Positions 32,750 to 39,205 of a stretch of 64,000 bases of DNA are shown here, in pieces. The notes under the pieces were generated by a model. It was not told the origin of the DNA and searched no databases. It saw only the letters and a list, made by a program, of their open reading frames with translations. Position 1 is the first letter of the stretch; every line of letters starts with the position of its first letter. A program made the position numbers and the translations under genes. The DNA lies in IMG/VR virus record IMGVR_UViG_3300047472_000309, positions 186,001 through 250,000 of that record. The stretch is one strand, 5' to 3'.

Positions 32750-34174
32750 TTATGCTGCTTTGATCAAGGTGTCGATCTGTCGAATCGTGTCTTCCAGATC
32801 GTTGACTTTCGGGATGGCGGCGATGAAATCGGTAAAGCTCTCGTGATGCTCGAAATAGAGCGCCTGCAAGTCACACCCCAGAATGGTGCGAAACTGCACC
32901 GACGGCACGACTTCGTCCGGATACATCAGGGCGATATAGTCGAGCACTTCCGCATGACCGAGTGGTTTGATCTCGTAGATGTGATCCACGCGACCTTTAC
33001 GAATCACCGCCGGATCAATGTCCTGCAACGTATTGGTCGTGAGGAAGATGAGGGTACCATGCAGCGAGGCAATCCCATCGAGCGCATTCAGAATCCCCGA
33101 GAGCGTCAGGTGTTCCATGTTCTCCATGAGCTTCGCCATCGGGTCCGCGGGTTCCTCCCAGTTCTTCGGGACGGCGTCACCCGCGGCTTGCAATTCGAGG
33201 CGTGGATTCCCGACCGCATCGTAGGTGACTTTCGCAGGCCGAAGTTCGCGCTCATCATCCTTCATAGCTAAACGACGGTGCGTAGCTTTTGCCGAGTCGA
33301 AGTCTTCGATGGCTAGAATCGAAGCGCTCGGCACATTGGTGAGTGCTTCTTCGAGCATCTCGTCATTGAGCGAATTCAGACTCAGCCGACACACGTTCAG
33401 GTTAAAGTGACTCGCCAGTGCCTTAATCAGGCTGGTCTTACCCGTGCCCGGTACCCCATGCAGCACGAAGGTCTTCTTCCAGGGCAGGCCGCGTGAGAGG
33501 TACCAGTGCTCGTTCTGCTGGAAGTCTTCGATGGTTTTCACCAGCGACTGCTTCAATGTCTTGTCGACGATGACGGTCTTCAGCTCACGCCGATCGAGCA
33601 TCGCGTAGTCCGCCCAGTAGTTGCTCTTAAAACGCATCAGCTTCAGTTTGTTCTCAGGGAACTTGTGACAGAACTCATCCACGAGCTGCTGCATGATGGC
33701 TTTGTTGCGACCAAACATGGTGAGCGTGACGAGATAGATGATGTTGTCGCGCCCTTGCTTTTCCACTGTGCGCCGATTCATCAGAAACAGGCGTCGTTTG
33801 TACAAAAAAAAGTGGTTGCCGTCACCGATGGCTACATCGGCTGCATTGCGATTGCCATCCTTACCGGTATGGCGATCGAAGAATTGCGGCCCGTAACTTT
33901 GTAGCGCAAGGTTACGCGAATAGTGCGAGAAGCGGTTGCGCATGAACCACTCCATGAAACTTGCATAATTCTCCCGCGCCCAGCCCAGCTCCGTATTGTC
34001 GAAGGTGAGCGTGGTGGTGAGCTGACCGTGAAGCTTACTGATGAGTTTCATCGGGATCTTGCGAAAGACCCAGGTGACTAAGCCTAAGCCCCAGAGTGAG
34101 ACTGCCCCCGCAATCATGGGATTCGAATGTGAGTAAGCGTTAAACGCCAACCAGAGATTCGTGAGGTAATTCAT
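32750..34174 (-). CDS. BCS1-like membrane-anchored AAA+ ATPase
   Basis: N-terminal TM; GVPGTGKTS Walker A; ILAIEDFD Walker B; TLSGILNALDG...IFLTTN....DPAVIRKGRVD. Confidence 0.9.
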   Translation of the reverse strand: MNYLTNLWLAFNAYSHSNPMIAGAVSLWGLGLVTWVFRKIPMKLISKLHGQLTTTLTFDNTELGWARENYASFMEWFMRNRFSHYSRNLALQSYGPQFFDRHTGKDGNRNAADVAIGDGNHFFLYKRRLFLMNRRTVEKQGRDNIIYLVTLTMFGRNKAIMQQLVDEFCHKFPENKLKLMRFKSNYWADYAMLDRRELKTVIVDKTLKQSLVKTIEDFQQNEHWYLSRGLPWKKTFVLHGVPGTGKTSLIKALASHFNLNVCRLSLNSLNDEMLEEALTNVPSASILAIEDFDSAKATHRRLAMKDDERELRPAKVTYDAVGNPRLELQAAGDAVPKNWEEPADPMAKLMENMEHLTLSGILNALDGIASLHGTLIFLTTNTLQDIDPAVIRKGRVDHIYEIKPLGHAEVLDYIALMYPDEVVPSVQFRTILGCDLQALYFEHHESFTDFIAAIPKVNDLEDTIRQIDTLIKAA

Positions 34175-36018: not shown

Positions 36019-36465
36019 TCAGGTCGGCGAAATCACATCGAAGGTGACAATGTCCTTCACCTTGACTTCACCGTCTGCTTTAATGTCGCACAGCGCGCGA
36101 ATGCCCAGCGTGACAGGTACGTCATCTTCTAGCAATTGCTCCAGCGAGCCCTTCCAGCGCCCCGCGGGCTTCATGCAGGCGAGTAACCGGTTGTCTTCCA
36201 TCTTCACGTCGGTAATTTGACAACAGGTGTTACCCATCTCCACGGTCTGGCAGCGTTCTTTGTATTGTTCGTGGGACTGACCCGCATAGCGTGCAGGTTG
36301 ACCCAGCTCACCGTGCGCCCGACCCTGTTTTACGCGCGCATTGAACTTCTCCACGGCTTTCGCCATAGCTTCGGGGTTCCAGACTCGACCTAGTTGATCC
36401 GGCTGACCCAATACCTTCACCACCACTTCGAGCGAACCATCTTCTTTACGCACCAACTCCGTCAT
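36019..36465 (-). CDS. Prohead protease (T4 gp21/phiKZ gp175-like) homologue lacking the catalytic His and Ser
   Basis: GRVW...AM.KAV..F....GRAHGELGQP, then TLGIRA and IVTFDVI, against the family GELxHP / xSSRG / xTxD motifs. Confidence 0.7.
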   Translation of the reverse strand: MTELVRKEDGSLEVVVKVLGQPDQLGRVWNPEAMAKAVEKFNARVKQGRAHGELGQPARYAGQSHEQYKERCQTVEMGNTCCQITDVKMEDNRLLACMKPAGRWKGSLEQLLEDDVPVTLGIRALCDIKADGEVKVKDIVTFDVISPT

Positions 36466-36468
36466 GCT

Positions 36469-36816
36469 TTACTCCTTGCTATCTTGAATGGACGCAAAAA
36501 CCGCACGCAGCAATGTGGGCGGCTCCGCAGCCACCAACAGCGGTTCGATTTCTACGACGGGCTTATTCGGAAACGCCACCAGCGGCATTCTAAAACGCAT
36601 GCCGTCCCACAGCGTCCGAACATGCGTGATGACTTCGTGGAATGCTTCCGTCGATTCCATCACGCGTGTCTCCATGAGTGCGAGCACGTGGCGGGTTTCA
36701 CGCAATGCCAACATCGGCGTTACACCGCAACCGGGTTTGAGCGCCGTGCGGATCTTCCAACCGCCTACCTTATCCGTGGCTTCAAAGAAACCATTTACCA
36801 CCGCAGTCTCAATCAC
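36469..36816 (-). CDS. Hypothetical protein (start GTG 36816)
   Basis: AGGAG RBS; the track's extension overlaps trxA and a terminator. Confidence 0.6.
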   Translation of the reverse strand: MIETAVVNGFFEATDKVGGWKIRTALKPGCGVTPMLALRETRHVLALMETRVMESTEAFHEVITHVRTLWDGMRFRMPLVAFPNKPVVEIEPLLVAAEPPTLLRAVFASIQDSKE

Positions 36817-36853: not shown

Positions 36854-36887
36854 CGGCATAAAAAAGAGACCAGCCGGAGCTGGTCTC
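36854..36887 (-). terminator. Terminator followed by TTTTTTATGCCG
   Basis: GAGACCAGC-TCCG-GCTGGTCTC. Confidence 0.85.
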
Positions 36888-36929: not shown

Positions 36930-37256
36930 TTAAACGTGCTGGTCGAGCCAGGCCTTCAACGCCTGCTTCGATAGCGCACCGGCTTTCTGCGCAACGATGG
37001 CGCCGTCCTTGTAGATGAAGAGTGCGGGAATACCGCGCACGCCGAGCTTGGTCGGAACAGCTTCGTTTTCGTCGACGTTCACTTTCACGATCTGCAGCTT
37101 CTCGGCGTATTCGGGCGCGATGTCCGCAAGCGTCGGGACCAGCGTCTTGCACGGACCGCACCACGGGGCCCAGAAGTCGACGAGCACCGGTTTGGACGAC
37201 TGCACTACCTCTGCTTCGAACGTCGCGTCAGAAGCGTTTTTGATGATTTCGCTCAT
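36930..37256 (-). CDS. trxA: Thioredoxin
   Basis: VLVDFWAPWCGPCK; GVRGIP cis-Pro motif. Confidence 0.97.
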   Translation of the reverse strand: MSEIIKNASDATFEAEVVQSSKPVLVDFWAPWCGPCKTLVPTLADIAPEYAEKLQIVKVNVDENEAVPTKLGVRGIPALFIYKDGAIVAQKAGALSKQALKAWLDQHV

Positions 37257-37324: not shown

Positions 37325-39205
37325 TTACAGCGTCGGCTCGTCAGCACCGATGAGATCCCCCGAGATATTCAGGTTCCCATTGATCACCACCGGCGTATCC
37401 GCCGCCACGACAATCACCACCTTCGCGTCGATCAGAGCCTGGACCCGCTCGTCGAGCTTGAGCAGGCGCGCTGCCATGTCTTCGGTCACGTAGTAGCGCA
37501 TCGAGTGATCAGCCAGGTCGTCGCCGGTGAGCGCCAGCACCATCTGCAGCACCTTGACCGTGAGGCGAGCCCGCGCGTCTTCGATGTTGGTGACATTGCT
37601 GACCGCTTCAAGCGTCACATGCGGCGCCGACACCATCGGCAGTTCGTCATCCGGCTGCGGCACGTTCACGCGCAAGCCTGCCGGAATCGGGCCACTGCCG
37701 AGCAGATGCAGGTTCATGCGGCGCAGCTGCGCGACTGTGGTATGGAACTCGATCGCCAGTTCGGTGATCTTGTCGCCTTCCTTCGCTTCGATGTAATACT
37801 GGTGCGTGACCGGATCGAAGATAGTCGGGCGGACTTGCGAAGGCTGCACGGTCGAGTCCACCCCGGCCAATGCTTCGAGCACAATGCGCGACCAGTTCTC
37901 GAACTTGAGTCCGCTCGCGAGCAGTTCCTTGATCGTGCCGCGCGGGCCGTCCTTCAGTTCTTCTTCTGCCACCCGTGCCTTGAGCGACTTGGGCACGACG
38001 ATCAGGTTCACTAGACCCAGGTGCACCTTGCCGACGTTATCGCTGTCGTCACGGATGAAACCGAGGTGTTCGAAGCGAAACAGCGACGGCGTATTGAGCG
38101 GGGTTGCTTGGAGACCGTCGGCGTCGACGAAGATGAGCTCTTCGCCTGCGACTTCGCGTTGCAGATTGGTGTTGATGGTCGCTTCGGTGTCGAGCACTGA
38201 CTGGTCGTTCACTTTGACGTCCAGATAATCGACGTGTCCGCCGTAGCCCACCGAGAACTTGCCACCGAGGCGCTCTTCGCCGACCTTCTTGGTGCGCTGA
38301 TACGAGGAGACTTCGTCGGTTTCCCAGTTGATCGGTAGCCCTTGACGGAAGGCTTCGTCGTCCTGAAACACGACCGGCGAATACGGCAGCAACTGACGGT
38401 AGAACGGATTGGCTTCCAGACCATCGCGCTGACGGATGACGGTCTCCGCACCGACGATGGAGAGCCACGTCTTGTATTCCTCAGCGCTTAAGCGCGTGAG
38501 GCCGTGCGTGAGTCCCATGCCGGGCAGATTGTCCGTGAAGTCCTTGTCGATGGCAAGGATGTGACCGGGGTGTTTATATGTCTTCATCGTGGTTCCTTTG
38601 TTTTTGTGAATCGATCGATGGGAAAGCATCTGGGCGAGAAATTCACTCGTCCAGCGCTCTTGCGGGGAAAGCAAACGCTTAGCCTGTTCCGCCTGCTGCC
38701 GCTCCTGCACCACCTGGGCGGGCTCATACGTGACGAAACTGTACTTGATACCGTGGATGCCTGAAGTGTGATCTTCACGCTGAGTCTCAGTCCACTGGGT
38801 CGGACGAATGGCCGGAAAGAAGGCATCACCCTCAAACTCTCGATCAATCTCGGTGATGAGGAGTTTGTCGGCCTTGGGTAAAGCTTGTTCGTAGAGGGTC
38901 GCACCGCCAATGAGAAACATCTCTTCCTCACCACGGTACTTACAGTATTCGATCGCGGCTTCCAGCGAGCCTGCGGTCAGACACCCTCTAAACTGCGCGG
39001 TCGCTTTGGTGGTCACGATAATGTTCTCGCGACCCGGCAAAGCGAAGCCGATGGACTCGTGCGTCTTGCGCCCCATGATGACGGGTTTGCCCGTCGTGAT
39101 GCGCTTAAAGTACGCCAAGTCCTCCGGCAGATGCCAGGGAAGTTGGTTGTTCAAACCAATCACACTGTTGCGGTCTCGCGCAGCGATGATGACAAGCTTA
39201 GTCAT
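37325..39205 (-). CDS. folA: Dihydrofolate reductase fused to a Nudix-like hydrolase and a LysM domain
   Basis: IG.NNQLPWHLPEDLAYFKRIT.GKPVIMGRKT, LPGRENI, IGGA, EGDAFFP; Nudix-like GGHVD...REVAGEEL...HLG; LysM KEGDKITELAIEFHTTVAQLRRMN...GLRVNVP. Confidence 0.88.
   Translation of the reverse strand: MTKLVIIAARDRNSVIGLNNQLPWHLPEDLAYFKRITTGKPVIMGRKTHESIGFALPGRENIIVTTKATAQFRGCLTAGSLEAAIEYCKYRGEEEMFLIGGATLYEQALPKADKLLITEIDREFEGDAFFPAIRPTQWTETQREDHTSGIHGIKYSFVTYEPAQVVQERQQAEQAKRLLSPQERWTSEFLAQMLSHRSIHKNKGTTMKTYKHPGHILAIDKDFTDNLPGMGLTHGLTRLSAEEYKTWLSIVGAETVIRQRDGLEANPFYRQLLPYSPVVFQDDEAFRQGLPINWETDEVSSYQRTKKVGEERLGGKFSVGYGGHVDYLDVKVNDQSVLDTEATINTNLQREVAGEELIFVDADGLQATPLNTPSLFRFEHLGFIRDDSDNVGKVHLGLVNLIVVPKSLKARVAEEELKDGPRGTIKELLASGLKFENWSRIVLEALAGVDSTVQPSQVRPTIFDPVTHQYYIEAKEGDKITELAIEFHTTVAQLRRMNLHLLGSGPIPAGLRVNVPQPDDELPMVSAPHVTLEAVSNVTNIEDARARLTVKVLQMVLALTGDDLADHSMRYYVTEDMAARLLKLDERVQALIDAKVVIVVAADTPVVINGNLNISGDLIGADEPTL

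What the first reader, a model, noticed from the sequence alone, without database searches (positions are those of the whole stretch)
36019..36465. Catalytically dead prohead-protease homologue among accessory genes
Seen: the gp21/gp175-like scaffold is present, but the catalytic His motif reads GELGQP, the Ser motif reads TLGIRA, and the protein stops just after TFDV. Established: T4 gp21 uses His85 (GELNHP) and Ser140 (VSSRG), and prohead protease has been shown to activate type I CBASS. Inference: a pseudo-protease decoy that binds the sensor without activating it, or a dominant-negative timer of head maturation. With the tube paralogues it suggests a strategy of disarmed copies of the phage's own immune triggers.
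Basis: partly seen in the sequence, partly recalled or inferred. Interest (0 to 1): 0.75.

Follow-up and report, generated by a model that had tools for sequence, protein, structure and literature searches.

The report
Dead prohead-protease paralogue in jumbo phage
A nucleus-forming jumbo phage carries, far from its head genes, a well-conserved 148-residue copy of its head-maturation protease that has lost the catalytic Ser and His and the capsid-targeting tail; such paralogues were noted in giant phages in 2017, and their function is still unknown.

Summary
Window 36019-36465 (-) encodes a 148-aa protein that matches Pfam Peptidase_S80 (phiKZ gp175 family; E 4.9e-14). Its model superposes on T4 gp21 (Z 16.4).

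The genome's real protease (268 aa, 177 kb away) reads GELGHP / FSIRA / VTWD. The target reads GELGQP / LGIRA / VTFD and stops at the end of the catalytic domain. So His and Ser are gone, Asp is kept, and the ~80-residue C-terminal propeptide is absent.

It is not a decaying copy:
- dN/dS is about 0.09.
- Seven further sequences (six orthologues and one cluster representative) keep Gln and Gly.
- Synteny next to thioredoxin is conserved.

It is also not a recent duplicate of this phage's protease. It belongs to a large, old family of short S80 paralogues. In 95 clusters under 200 aa, the Ser position is Gly or Ala in 81, and His survives in 16. The neighbouring Glu, Pro, Arg and Asp are nearly invariant.

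Such paralogues were already described (SPN3US gp117, 201phi2-1 gp206; Ali et al. 2017), so this is a new member of a known, uncharacterised kind.

The CBASS-decoy and dominant-negative ideas are untested; a co-folding test gave no answer. My best guess is a soluble, unpackaged, non-cleaving binder of the protease's substrates or partners.

The parts
36019..36465 (-). CDS of the 148-aa S80-family pseudoprotease. It covers the catalytic domain only and has no C-terminal propeptide.
   Evidence: ORF. Pfam S80 E 4.9e-14. hhalign to active proteases E 9.5e-43, covering template columns 28-192 of 267. Model pLDDT 96.6. T4 gp21 Z 16.4. dN/dS 0.09.
36298..36300 (-). Codon CAA = Gln56, at the position of the catalytic His (GELGQP here, GELGHP in the active enzyme).
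   Evidence: Alignments. Gln is found in all eight sequences of the target's clade. The column is hypervariable across the wider short family.
36103..36105 (-). Codon GGC = Gly121, at the position of the catalytic Ser (LGIRA here, FSIRA in the active enzyme).
   Evidence: Gly in 68 and Ala in 13 of 95 short-family cluster representatives.
36037..36039 (-). Codon GAT = Asp143, the retained third triad residue (VTFD).
   Evidence: Invariant in 91 of 91 short-family sequences. Aligns with invariant D180 of the active proteases.
36472..36477 (-). Shine-Dalgarno AAGGAG, 6 nt before the ATG. It overlaps the last codons of the upstream gene, whose TAA stop is at 36469-36471.
   Evidence: Sequence read.
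36469..36816 (-). Upstream 115-aa gene of unknown function (GTG start). It is tightly coupled to the target, with 3 nt between its stop and the target's ATG.
   Evidence: 97% identical to the called 115-aa gene of the orthologous locus L013. A gene stands at this position in L009 (113 aa) and L014 (154 aa), not compared here, and none in L010 and L011. No Pfam or PHROG match.
36854..36887 (-). Start of the transcription unit: a GC-rich hairpin (36866-36887), a T-run, then TATGCCG (36854-36860). This looks like a terminator plus a phiKZ-late-type (TATG) promoter-like element.
   Evidence: Terminator scan. The element is conserved in six orthologous loci, with compensatory stem changes. The same hairpin + TATGCCG recurs across the genome: 40 of 63 TATGCCG sites have the hairpin, against 18.5% of random sites. 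The phiKZ late promoter consensus is TATG, with the G as +1 (PMC4666361).
35168..35989 (-). Downstream 273-aa gene of unknown function. A 273-292-aa gene stands at this position in every orthologous locus that reaches that far.
   Evidence: No Pfam or PHROG match. The Atlas gave no lead.
36930..37256 (-). Thioredoxin gene, the conserved upstream neighbour.
   Evidence: Pfam PF00085 E 1.6e-32. Adjacency to the S80-like gene is conserved in L009, L010, L011, L012 and L032, and in FLC9.

Best explanation
The gene encodes a pseudoprotease: a selected, non-catalytic paralogue of the phage's S80 (phiKZ gp175 / T4 gp21-type) head-maturation protease.

Shown here:
- It has the complete protease fold.
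- It keeps the residues that surround the active site in real S80 enzymes: the Glu and Pro of GExGxP, two Arg including the one two residues after the Ser position, and the triad Asp.
- It has Gly where the nucleophile Ser should be and Gln where the general-base His should be.
- It ends exactly at the end of the catalytic domain, so the C-terminal propeptide is missing.
- It is under strong purifying selection and belongs to an old, widespread family of short paralogues with the same defects.

Inferred mechanism: because it lacks the propeptide that is thought to carry the real enzyme into the prohead core, it stays soluble outside the capsid. Because the pocket is preserved but the chemistry is removed (a small residue at the nucleophile position, as in a substrate-trap mutant), it binds without cutting the Glu-containing cleavage motifs or propeptides that the real protease recognises. 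It would thereby shield or buffer those targets outside the prohead. It is probably transcribed from a TATG-type (non-virion RNA polymerase) promoter-like element rather than from the early promoter type.
For: Identity:
- sequence and profile; structure; T4 gp21 Z 16.4.
- The active paralogue is elsewhere in the genome, and there are only two S80-fold genes in all.

Loss of Ser and His with retention of the neighbours:
- The active family has invariant E75, H78, P79, R93, S155, R157, D180, V182.
- The target has E53, Q56, P57, R71, G121, R123, D143 and V144/I145.
- In 91 short-family sequences R123 and D143 are invariant, E53 is 92%, P57 96% and R71 88%.
- The Ser column is Gly or Ala in 81 of 95 clusters. 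The His column holds 16 different residues.

Selection and inheritance:
- dN/dS 0.09 at dS 0.68.
- Gln and Gly are fixed in the target's clade, down to 51% identity among the six orthologues found.
- Synteny is conserved.
- The target lies in an old clade distinct from the active proteases.

The missing tail matters: SPN3US gp245 lacking part of its 64-residue propeptide is active in vitro but is not found in proheads (PMC7411985). SPN3US gp117, the described paralogue, does not appear in the held virion-proteome supplements.

Transcription signal: and PMC4666361.
Against: - No binding partner has been shown.
- The co-folding test with the active protease was uninformative, and no peptide-binding test was possible.
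- The conserved Glu/Arg/Asp could be a purely structural network rather than a ligand site. I could not measure distances in the model.
- The expression class is only inferred from a motif that also precedes DNA polymerase and UvsX genes, so 'late' is not established.
- A minority of family members keep Ser or His. One tandem copy in a relative keeps both, so the family may not share one function.
Confidence: 0.35

Rival explanations
1. It binds the active protease itself. It forms an inactive hetero-oligomer with free protease molecules that are not yet inside a prohead. This would act as a dominant-negative brake or timer of maturation and prevent cytoplasmic proteolysis.
For: The two proteins share the same fold. 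Herpesvirus proteases of this fold have been crystallised in both dimeric and monomeric forms (entry titles). The propeptide-less paralogue would stay outside the capsid (PMC7411985). T4 gp21 activity outside the prohead is what CBASS detects (PMC12991175), so restraining it would pay.
Against: Co-folding scored 0.14, below the mark of 0.32. The tool says this is no evidence either way. The paralogue is only 27% identical to the enzyme and belongs to a long-separated clade. No interface conservation was shown.
Confidence: 0.15
2. It is an immune decoy. It occupies the protease-sensitive activation loop of CBASS CD-NTases, or of another protease-sensing defence, without cutting it, so the sensor is not tripped.
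For: CD-NTases are activated by prohead-protease cleavage of an exposed loop at xxE motifs, and a catalytically dead gp21 does not activate them (PMC12991175). Escape from type I CBASS maps to prohead proteases (10.1101/2023.05.21.541620). The gene sits in an accessory block of small unknown genes in several phages. The family is diverse and often multi-copy, as anti-defence genes tend to be.
Against: There is no direct evidence. A stoichiometric shield for a disordered loop would need high affinity and abundance. The family is conserved across phages of very different hosts (Burkholderia, Vibrio, Bacillus, Pseudomonas, Erwinia), whereas CD-NTase loops show limited sequence similarity (PMC12991175). 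Strong purifying selection (dN/dS 0.09) is not the signature of an arms-race gene.
Confidence: 0.12
3. It is a non-catalytic structural or scaffolding component of the prohead core, as inactive gp21 zymogen is part of the T4 core. It would be incorporated by a route that does not need the propeptide.
For: It is homologous to a 'prohead core scaffolding protein and protease'. Some database entries name short homologues 'prohead core scaffold protein'. A TATG-type promoter-like element lies upstream.
Against: The gene is 177 kb from the head module, among nucleotide-metabolism and unknown genes. The propeptide inferred to target the enzyme into proheads is missing (PMC7411985). SPN3US gp117 is not in the held virion-proteome tables. 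The database names look like transferred family names, not findings.
Confidence: 0.1
4. The fold has been re-used for something unrelated to the protease's substrates, for example binding a host protein, a nucleic acid or a small molecule. The conserved Glu/Arg/Asp would be only a structural core.
For: The divergence is very old. The genomic contexts are varied and hold no head genes. Some members are fused to other domains, at 300-540 aa.
Against: The residues that stay invariant are exactly those invariant around the active site of the enzymes, whereas most of the rest of the sequence is free to vary. The nucleophile position is restricted to Gly or Ala rather than drifting.
Confidence: 0.2
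5. It is still an enzyme that uses another nucleophile and base (for example Thr141 or Cys81 with Asp143), or it is a decaying relic with no function.
For: Cys81 (68%) and Thr141 (79%) are the only conserved nucleophile-capable columns. Ali et al. noted a nearby His in gp117 (PMC5694885).
Against: Both columns are equally conserved in the true proteases, so they are not replacements. No conserved His or Lys base exists in the family. His51 is not kept even in the orthologues. The relic idea is excluded by dN/dS 0.09, intact frames in all orthologues and a pLDDT 96.6 fold.
Confidence: 0.05

Closest known systems
Diverged prohead-protease paralogues of giant phages: SPN3US gp117, Erwinia phage homologues, 201phi2-1 gp206 (145 aa), PhiPA3 gp143 (136 aa). 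Described in Ali et al. 2017, Front Microbiol, PMC5694885. Corresponds to PHROG phrog_7478.
   Same: It is a second S80-fold gene besides the real protease. It is about 125-185 aa, lacks the 3' (C-terminal) part and lies away from the head genes. It matches phrog_7478 at E 1.7e-16. It has a structural match to a 145-aa 201phi2-1 protein (B3FJ68, E 8e-9, TM 0.70) and to short proteins of Phabio, RAY, Machina and Eowyn. Function is unknown.
   Different: gp117 was reported to keep the aligned Ser and Asp and to lack only the His. The target has lost both Ser and His. The target's own clade (Gln/Gly, next to thioredoxin) comes from rhizosphere and soil metagenomes and has no cultured member. The nearest isolate, Burkholderia phage FLC9, carries a different subtype (gp284, Asn/Ala) at the syntenic place.
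MEROPS S80 / Pfam PF20034 prohead proteases (phiKZ gp175, SPN3US gp245) and this genome's own enzyme at G000:C1:44419-45225(-).
   Same: Same fold and motif scaffold: GExGxP, NVCC, xxIRA, VTxD. The Asp of the triad is kept.
   Different: No Ser nucleophile, no His base and no C-terminal propeptide. Only 27% identity to the genome's own enzyme. It lies in a separate old clade, and the gene is outside the head module.
T4 gp21 (MEROPS S77, PDB 5JBL) and herpesvirus assemblins.
   Same: The structures superpose: Z 16.4 and rmsd 2.1 A for gp21; Z 5-7 for herpesvirus proteases. The GELNxP motif aligns.
   Different: About 15% identity. It is not an enzyme, and it is not part of a scaffold gene cluster.
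Pseudoenzymes in general that retain ligand binding after loss of catalytic residues (comparison from general knowledge, not tested here).
   Same: Selective loss of the chemistry with conservation of the pocket, together with purifying selection.
   Different: No ligand or partner has been identified for this family.

Membership tests
Peptidase family S80 (phiKZ gp175-type prohead protease), as a homologue | Significant sequence match to the family profile and the same fold | tested here: met
   PF20034 E 4.9e-14, above the cut-off. hhalign probability 100%, E 9.5e-43. T4 gp21 Z 16.4.
Peptidase family S80, as a functional peptidase | Catalytic Ser nucleophile (FSIRA motif; S153 in SPN3US gp245, where S153A is inactive) | tested here: not met
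   Gly121 is at that column. PMC7411985 gives the S153A result.
Peptidase family S80, as a functional peptidase | Catalytic His (GExGHP motif) | tested here: not met
   Gln56 is at that column.
Peptidase family S80, as a functional peptidase | Third triad residue Asp (VTxD) | tested here: met
   Asp143 is invariant in 91 of 91 sequences.
Peptidase family S80, as a functional peptidase | C-terminal propeptide that is auto-cleaved and is inferred to target the enzyme into the prohead | tested here: not met
   The protein ends at template column 192 of 267. The active paralogue continues for about 80 more residues containing A-x-E motifs. PMC7411985.
Peptidase family S80, as a functional peptidase | Proteolytic activity after Glu in S/A/G-x-E motifs | not testable with these tools
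   Needs a biochemical assay.
Short prohead-protease paralogues of giant phages (gp117 / gp206-like; phrog_7478) | A second S80-fold gene in a genome that also has a bona fide protease | tested here: met
   Two S80-fold genes in the 310,654-bp genome.
Short prohead-protease paralogues of giant phages (gp117 / gp206-like; phrog_7478) | Truncated after the catalytic domain (about 125-185 aa) | tested here: met
   148 aa.
Short prohead-protease paralogues of giant phages (gp117 / gp206-like; phrog_7478) | Profile or structural match to named members | tested here: met
   phrog_7478 E 1.7e-16. BFVD hits to 201phi2-1, Phabio, RAY, Machina and Eowyn short proteins. Groups with short Ser-less proteins in the tree.
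Anti-CBASS or anti-defence proteins | Binds a defence sensor or its signal and relieves defence | not testable with these tools
   No sequence or structure relation to a known anti-CBASS family was sought or found. Only the literature context is available (PMC12991175).
Hetero-oligomeric inhibitor of the active protease | Confident predicted or measured interface with the enzyme | tested here: inconclusive
   Complex prediction scored 0.14, below the mark of 0.32: 'no answer'.

The most novel reading that the evidence does not exclude
The whole family of short Ser-less S80 paralogues, this gene included, could be a jumbo-phage counter-measure to protease-sensing immunity. In this reading they are soluble dead proteases that cap either stray active prohead protease or the cleavable activation loops of CD-NTases. 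Head maturation could then proceed without tripping CBASS-type tripwires.
Probability: 0.12. Interest if true: 0.85.

Novelty: new member of a known kind. Interest (0 to 1): 0.5.

Why it matters
Prohead proteases are essential, and bacterial CBASS immunity has recently been shown to detect them through their cutting activity. A large, old, selected family of protease look-alikes that cannot cut and are not packaged is an obvious candidate for controlling where and when that activity is seen. It could act for the phage's own assembly or against host sensors.

The family was noticed in 2017 but has never been assigned a function. This analysis shows three things:
- The loss of the nucleophile is a family-wide hallmark, not an accident of one gene.
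- The rest of the active-site neighbourhood is conserved.
- The genes are under purifying selection.

Together these turn a curiosity into a concrete, testable pseudoenzyme hypothesis in tractable model phages.

Tried and rejected
- Megablast of 3 kb around the gene against GenBank phages found no match. The phage is uncultured and comes from rhizosphere metagenomes.
- phmmer of the single protein against PDB sequences gave only spurious PD-L1 and KDM1B hits at E around 0.07-0.3. The active-protease profile also missed gp21. The short-family profile found 5JBL weakly, at E 0.0099. The structural comparison was what settled the fold.
- The first AlphaFold run, with 7 close orthologues, was mediocre (pLDDT 67). 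A 91-sequence alignment gave pLDDT 96.6.
- Co-folding of the target with the active protease gave no answer.
I dropped that row and did not resend it.
- The sigma-70 promoter scan showed no enrichment (3 found, 3.0 expected). This is expected for a phage with its own RNA polymerases.
- The motif CTATTAC upstream of the operon was not significantly enriched in the window (6 found, 2.3 expected). I therefore do not claim an early promoter there.
- phiKZ itself shows only gp175 with the S80, phrog_7478 and short-family profiles.
- Thomas & Black 2013, on gp175 mutagenesis, is not held.
- Literature searches for a functional study of the paralogues (gp117, gp143, 'pseudoprotease') found none.
- Atlas searches gave only family confirmation for the target and nothing for the 273-aa neighbour.
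- The pseudogene or relic reading was rejected on dN/dS and conservation. An alternative catalytic dyad was rejected because no conserved nucleophile/base pair is specific to the family.

Full report
**1. What is there**

Window 36019-36465 on the minus strand is an ATG-initiated ORF of 148 codons. An AAGGAG ribosome-binding site lies 6 nt upstream.

The protein matches Pfam Peptidase_S80, the phiKZ gp175 family, with E 4.9e-14 (52.5 bits; cut-off 23.4). It also matches two PHROGs named 'head maturation protease'. One of them, phrog_7478, has a profile only 147 positions long.

**2. The genome and the real protease**

The window is positions 186001-250000 of a 310,654-bp virus record with direct terminal repeats. 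The genome encodes a nuclear-shell protein (chimallin PHROG, E 1.5e-108) and a phage multisubunit RNA polymerase beta subunit. It is therefore a nucleus-forming, phiKZ-like jumbo phage. The same DNA occurs in rhizosphere and soil metagenomes.

The nearest isolate is Burkholderia phage FLC9, whose protease is 82.5% identical.

A search of the whole genome finds exactly two S80-fold genes. One is the target. The other is a 268-aa protein at G000:C1:44419-45225(-), with PF20034 E 1.7e-74. That protein reads GELGHP, CFSIRA and VTWD. It continues for about 80 residues beyond the catalytic domain, with several A-x-E motifs. It is evidently the active head-maturation protease.

**3. Catalytic residues**

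The pairwise alignment has E 3e-14 at 27% identity. The multiple alignment and the profile-profile alignment (probability 100%, E 9.5e-43) agree with it. All three place:
- Gln56 at the catalytic His;
- Gly121 at the catalytic Ser;
- Asp143 at the third triad residue.

The triad is H77/S153/D178 in SPN3US gp245 (PMC5694885), and S153A abolishes activity there (PMC7411985).

The eight invariant columns of 30 active proteases are E75, H78, P79, R93, S155, R157, D180 and V182. The target keeps E53, P57, R71, R123 and D143, plus Val/Ile at the last position. It has lost only the His and the Ser.

The protein ends at the boundary of the catalytic domain. The C-terminal propeptide is therefore absent. 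In SPN3US that propeptide is auto-cleaved and is inferred to carry the enzyme into the prohead core (PMC7411985).

**4. Structure**

With 91 family sequences AlphaFold gives pLDDT 96.6 and pTM 0.88.
- The best PDB match is T4 gp21 (5JBL): Foldseek probability 1.00, TM 0.73; VIA Z 16.4, rmsd 2.1 A over 135 of 148 residues.
- Herpesvirus proteases follow at Z 5-7.
- The 5JBL chain aligns its GELNAP to the family's GElGxP.

**5. It is a functional gene, not a relic**

Six orthologues from metagenomes (88-51% identity) all have Gln and Gly at the two positions.

Nei-Gojobori dN/dS is 0.09 for the closest pair (dS 0.68). It is at most 0.19 for the pairs where dS could be estimated.

Gene order is conserved across loci L009, L010, L011, L013 and L014:
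- DUF8224 protein;
- two small genes;
- DHFR fusion;
- thioredoxin;
- an optional 113-154-aa gene;
- the S80-like gene;
- a 273-292-aa gene;
- a gene of about 190 aa;
- DUF1653;
- BCS1-like AAA ATPase (seen in L010 and in the window).

A more distant homologue (P0009, 39% identical) also lies next to thioredoxin.

**6. It belongs to a large, old family**

A profile of the orthologues was searched against 1.84 billion cluster representatives. It found 328 proteins at E <= 0.001. Of the 150 best, 95 are shorter than 200 aa.

In these short proteins:

| Column | Residues found |
|---|---|
| Ser position | Gly 68, Ala 13, Ser 6 |
| His position | His in 16; otherwise 15 different residues |
| Asp | kept in 87 of 88 aligned |
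| Glu (of GE) | 88 |
| Pro | 90 |
| Arg (two after the Ser position) | 91 |

Only one short protein has both His and Ser. By contrast, 35 of 54 proteins of 200 aa or more have both. Those are the real proteases.

In a maximum-likelihood tree the active enzymes form two clades. The genome's own protease sits in one of them. The target lies in a starred clade of four Gln/Gly proteins, deep within the short Ser-less sequences. The active/dead label needs only 3-4 changes on the tree, against about 33 for shuffled labels. So the target is not a recently disarmed copy of this phage's protease.

Structure search in viral proteins finds the same short proteins in many jumbo phages, often in several copies per genome:
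- 201phi2-1 (145 and 125 aa);
- Phabio (three proteins);
- RAY, Machina, Eowyn, Miami, Psa21 and Yersinia fHe-Yen9-04.

Direct inspection shows other substitutions at the His and Ser positions:
- FLC9 gp284: Asn and Ala, at the syntenic place;
- Vibrio pVa-21_085: Phe and Gly;
- Bacillus AgentSmith_182: Ser and Gly.

**7. Prior knowledge**

Ali et al. [quoted passage not shown] They named SPN3US gp117, homologues in Erwinia phages, 201phi2-1 gp206 (145 aa) and PhiPA3 gp143 (136 aa). They noted that the 3' end of the protease gene is missing, and they called a protease paralogue unprecedented at that time.

They found Ser and Asp aligned in gp117 but no His. They proposed no function. I found no later functional study. 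The finding is therefore a new member of a known but uncharacterised kind.

What this analysis adds is the family-wide pattern: the nucleophile is lost to Gly or Ala, the His position is free, the neighbours are fixed, selection is purifying, and the family is large.

**8. Expression signals**

Directly after thioredoxin there is a conserved pair of hairpins. The second (36866-36887) is followed by a T-run and TATGCCG (36854-36860). The element is conserved in six orthologous loci, with compensatory changes in the stem.

Genome-wide, 40 of 63 TATGCCG sites follow such a hairpin, against 18.5% of random positions. Most of these sites are intergenic.

phiKZ late promoters have the consensus TATG, with the G as the start site (PMC4666361). 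The element may therefore combine a terminator with a promoter for the non-virion RNA polymerase. However, it also precedes the DNA polymerase and UvsX-like genes, so it does not define a strictly late class.

A different, long motif ending in CCTATATTAC precedes the chimallin and RNA polymerase beta genes. It resembles my recollection of the phiKZ early-promoter consensus (TATATTAC), which I did not check. The target's operon has only a degenerate version of it (GGACTATTAC), and that is not significantly enriched.

I infer middle or late expression, not early. This remains an inference.

**9. Mechanism**

Shown:
- the fold is intact;
- the chemistry is removed;
- the pocket neighbours are conserved;
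- the targeting propeptide is absent;
- the gene is under selection and lies outside the head module.

Inferred: the protein is a soluble, unpackaged protein that binds, without cutting, what the protease recognises. A small residue is required at the nucleophile position, while the His position is free to vary. That is the pattern of a substrate trap, and it argues for binding at the former active site.

Whether the bound partner is a head-protein or protease propeptide (my preferred reading), the active protease itself, or a host sensor cannot be decided here. The one computational test available, co-folding with the active protease, returned no answer.

CD-NTases are switched on by prohead-protease cleavage of an exposed loop, and a dead gp21 does not switch them on (PMC12991175). 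It remains untested. Strong purifying selection and the breadth of hosts fit an assembly-linked role at least as well.

**10. Verdict**

The description 'catalytically dead prohead-protease homologue among accessory genes' is correct. The functional interpretation is open. It is a new member of a known kind, of moderate interest and now well defined for experiment.

Noticed in passing
window 36854-36887 (-), and about 40 further sites in the genome (e.g. G000:C1:25926+, 44380-, 192190- = window 6190-): A recurrent intergenic element: a GC-rich hairpin immediately followed by (T)TATGCCG(T/C). 40 of 63 TATGCCG sites have the hairpin, against 18.5% of random sites. At the target locus the stem shows compensatory changes between related phages. 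It may be a combined terminator and phiKZ-late-type (TATG) promoter, but it also precedes DNA polymerase and UvsX genes.
   Followed up: partly
G000:C1:5134(-), 301301(-), 44340(-); window 45413 (-) (= G000:C1:231413); about 13 intergenic sites in all: A long conserved motif, ...GATTCAAAGATTTGTTnGACCTATATTAC(TA). It lies upstream of the chimallin (nuclear shell) gene, an RNA polymerase beta gene and other genes. It resembles my recollection of the phiKZ early-promoter consensus (TATATTAC), which I did not check in a paper, and is probably this phage's early promoter.
   Followed up: partly
L010:8472-9005 (+), a related metagenomic phage contig: A second, tandem short S80 paralogue (177 aa) directly after the orthologue of the target. 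It keeps His, Ser and Asp (SEFGHP / KFSPRV / TFDV) but also lacks the C-terminal propeptide. It could be a possibly active, untargeted protease. In the tree it groups loosely, in a clade with poor support, with P0088, a 184-aa Asn/Ala protein with the same motifs and length as FLC9 gp284.
   Followed up: partly
L006:8045-8599 (-) = Burkholderia phage FLC9 gp284 (LC667451.1 217044-217598): The nearest isolate has, at the syntenic place, a 184-aa dead paralogue of a different subtype (GEMGNP / FAARA). Thioredoxin lies on its other side. FLC9 has no orthologue of the target's own Gln/Gly subtype. All FLC9 genes here are annotated 'hypothetical protein', including the real protease (gp36).
   Followed up: partly
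window 37325-39205 (-): A 626-aa fusion protein. It has an N-terminal dihydrofolate reductase (PF00186, E 6.9e-57) followed by about 450 residues that match phrog_8902 (unknown function). Relatives carry a faint LysM hit. The fusion is conserved in all related loci at 623-756 aa.
   Followed up: no
window 32750-34174 (-): A 474-aa BCS1-like AAA ATPase (BCS1_N + AAA; phrog_7485, E 4e-120) in the same gene block. A second related ATPase lies at G000:C1:131048-132139.
   Followed up: no
L009:6075-7208, L011:4363-5496, L012:680-1813: Relatives carry a 377-aa periplasmic-binding-protein-like gene (Peripla_BP_6 / ANF_receptor) between the DHFR fusion and thioredoxin. It is absent from the window and from L010.
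   Followed up: no
L034:5001-5408 and L034:7573-8028; BFVD hits from Pseudomonas phage Phabio (three proteins) and 201phi2-1 (two proteins): Several jumbo phages carry two or three short S80 paralogues, sometimes within 2.5 kb of each other. They sit among small unknown genes and nucleotide-metabolism genes (thymidylate synthase, thioredoxin, metallophosphatase).
   Followed up: partly
representative proteins P0047, P0061, P0078, P0107, P0144 (395-538 aa): Some Ser-less S80 domains are fused to large additional regions, N- or C-terminal. I did not examine what those regions are.
   Followed up: no
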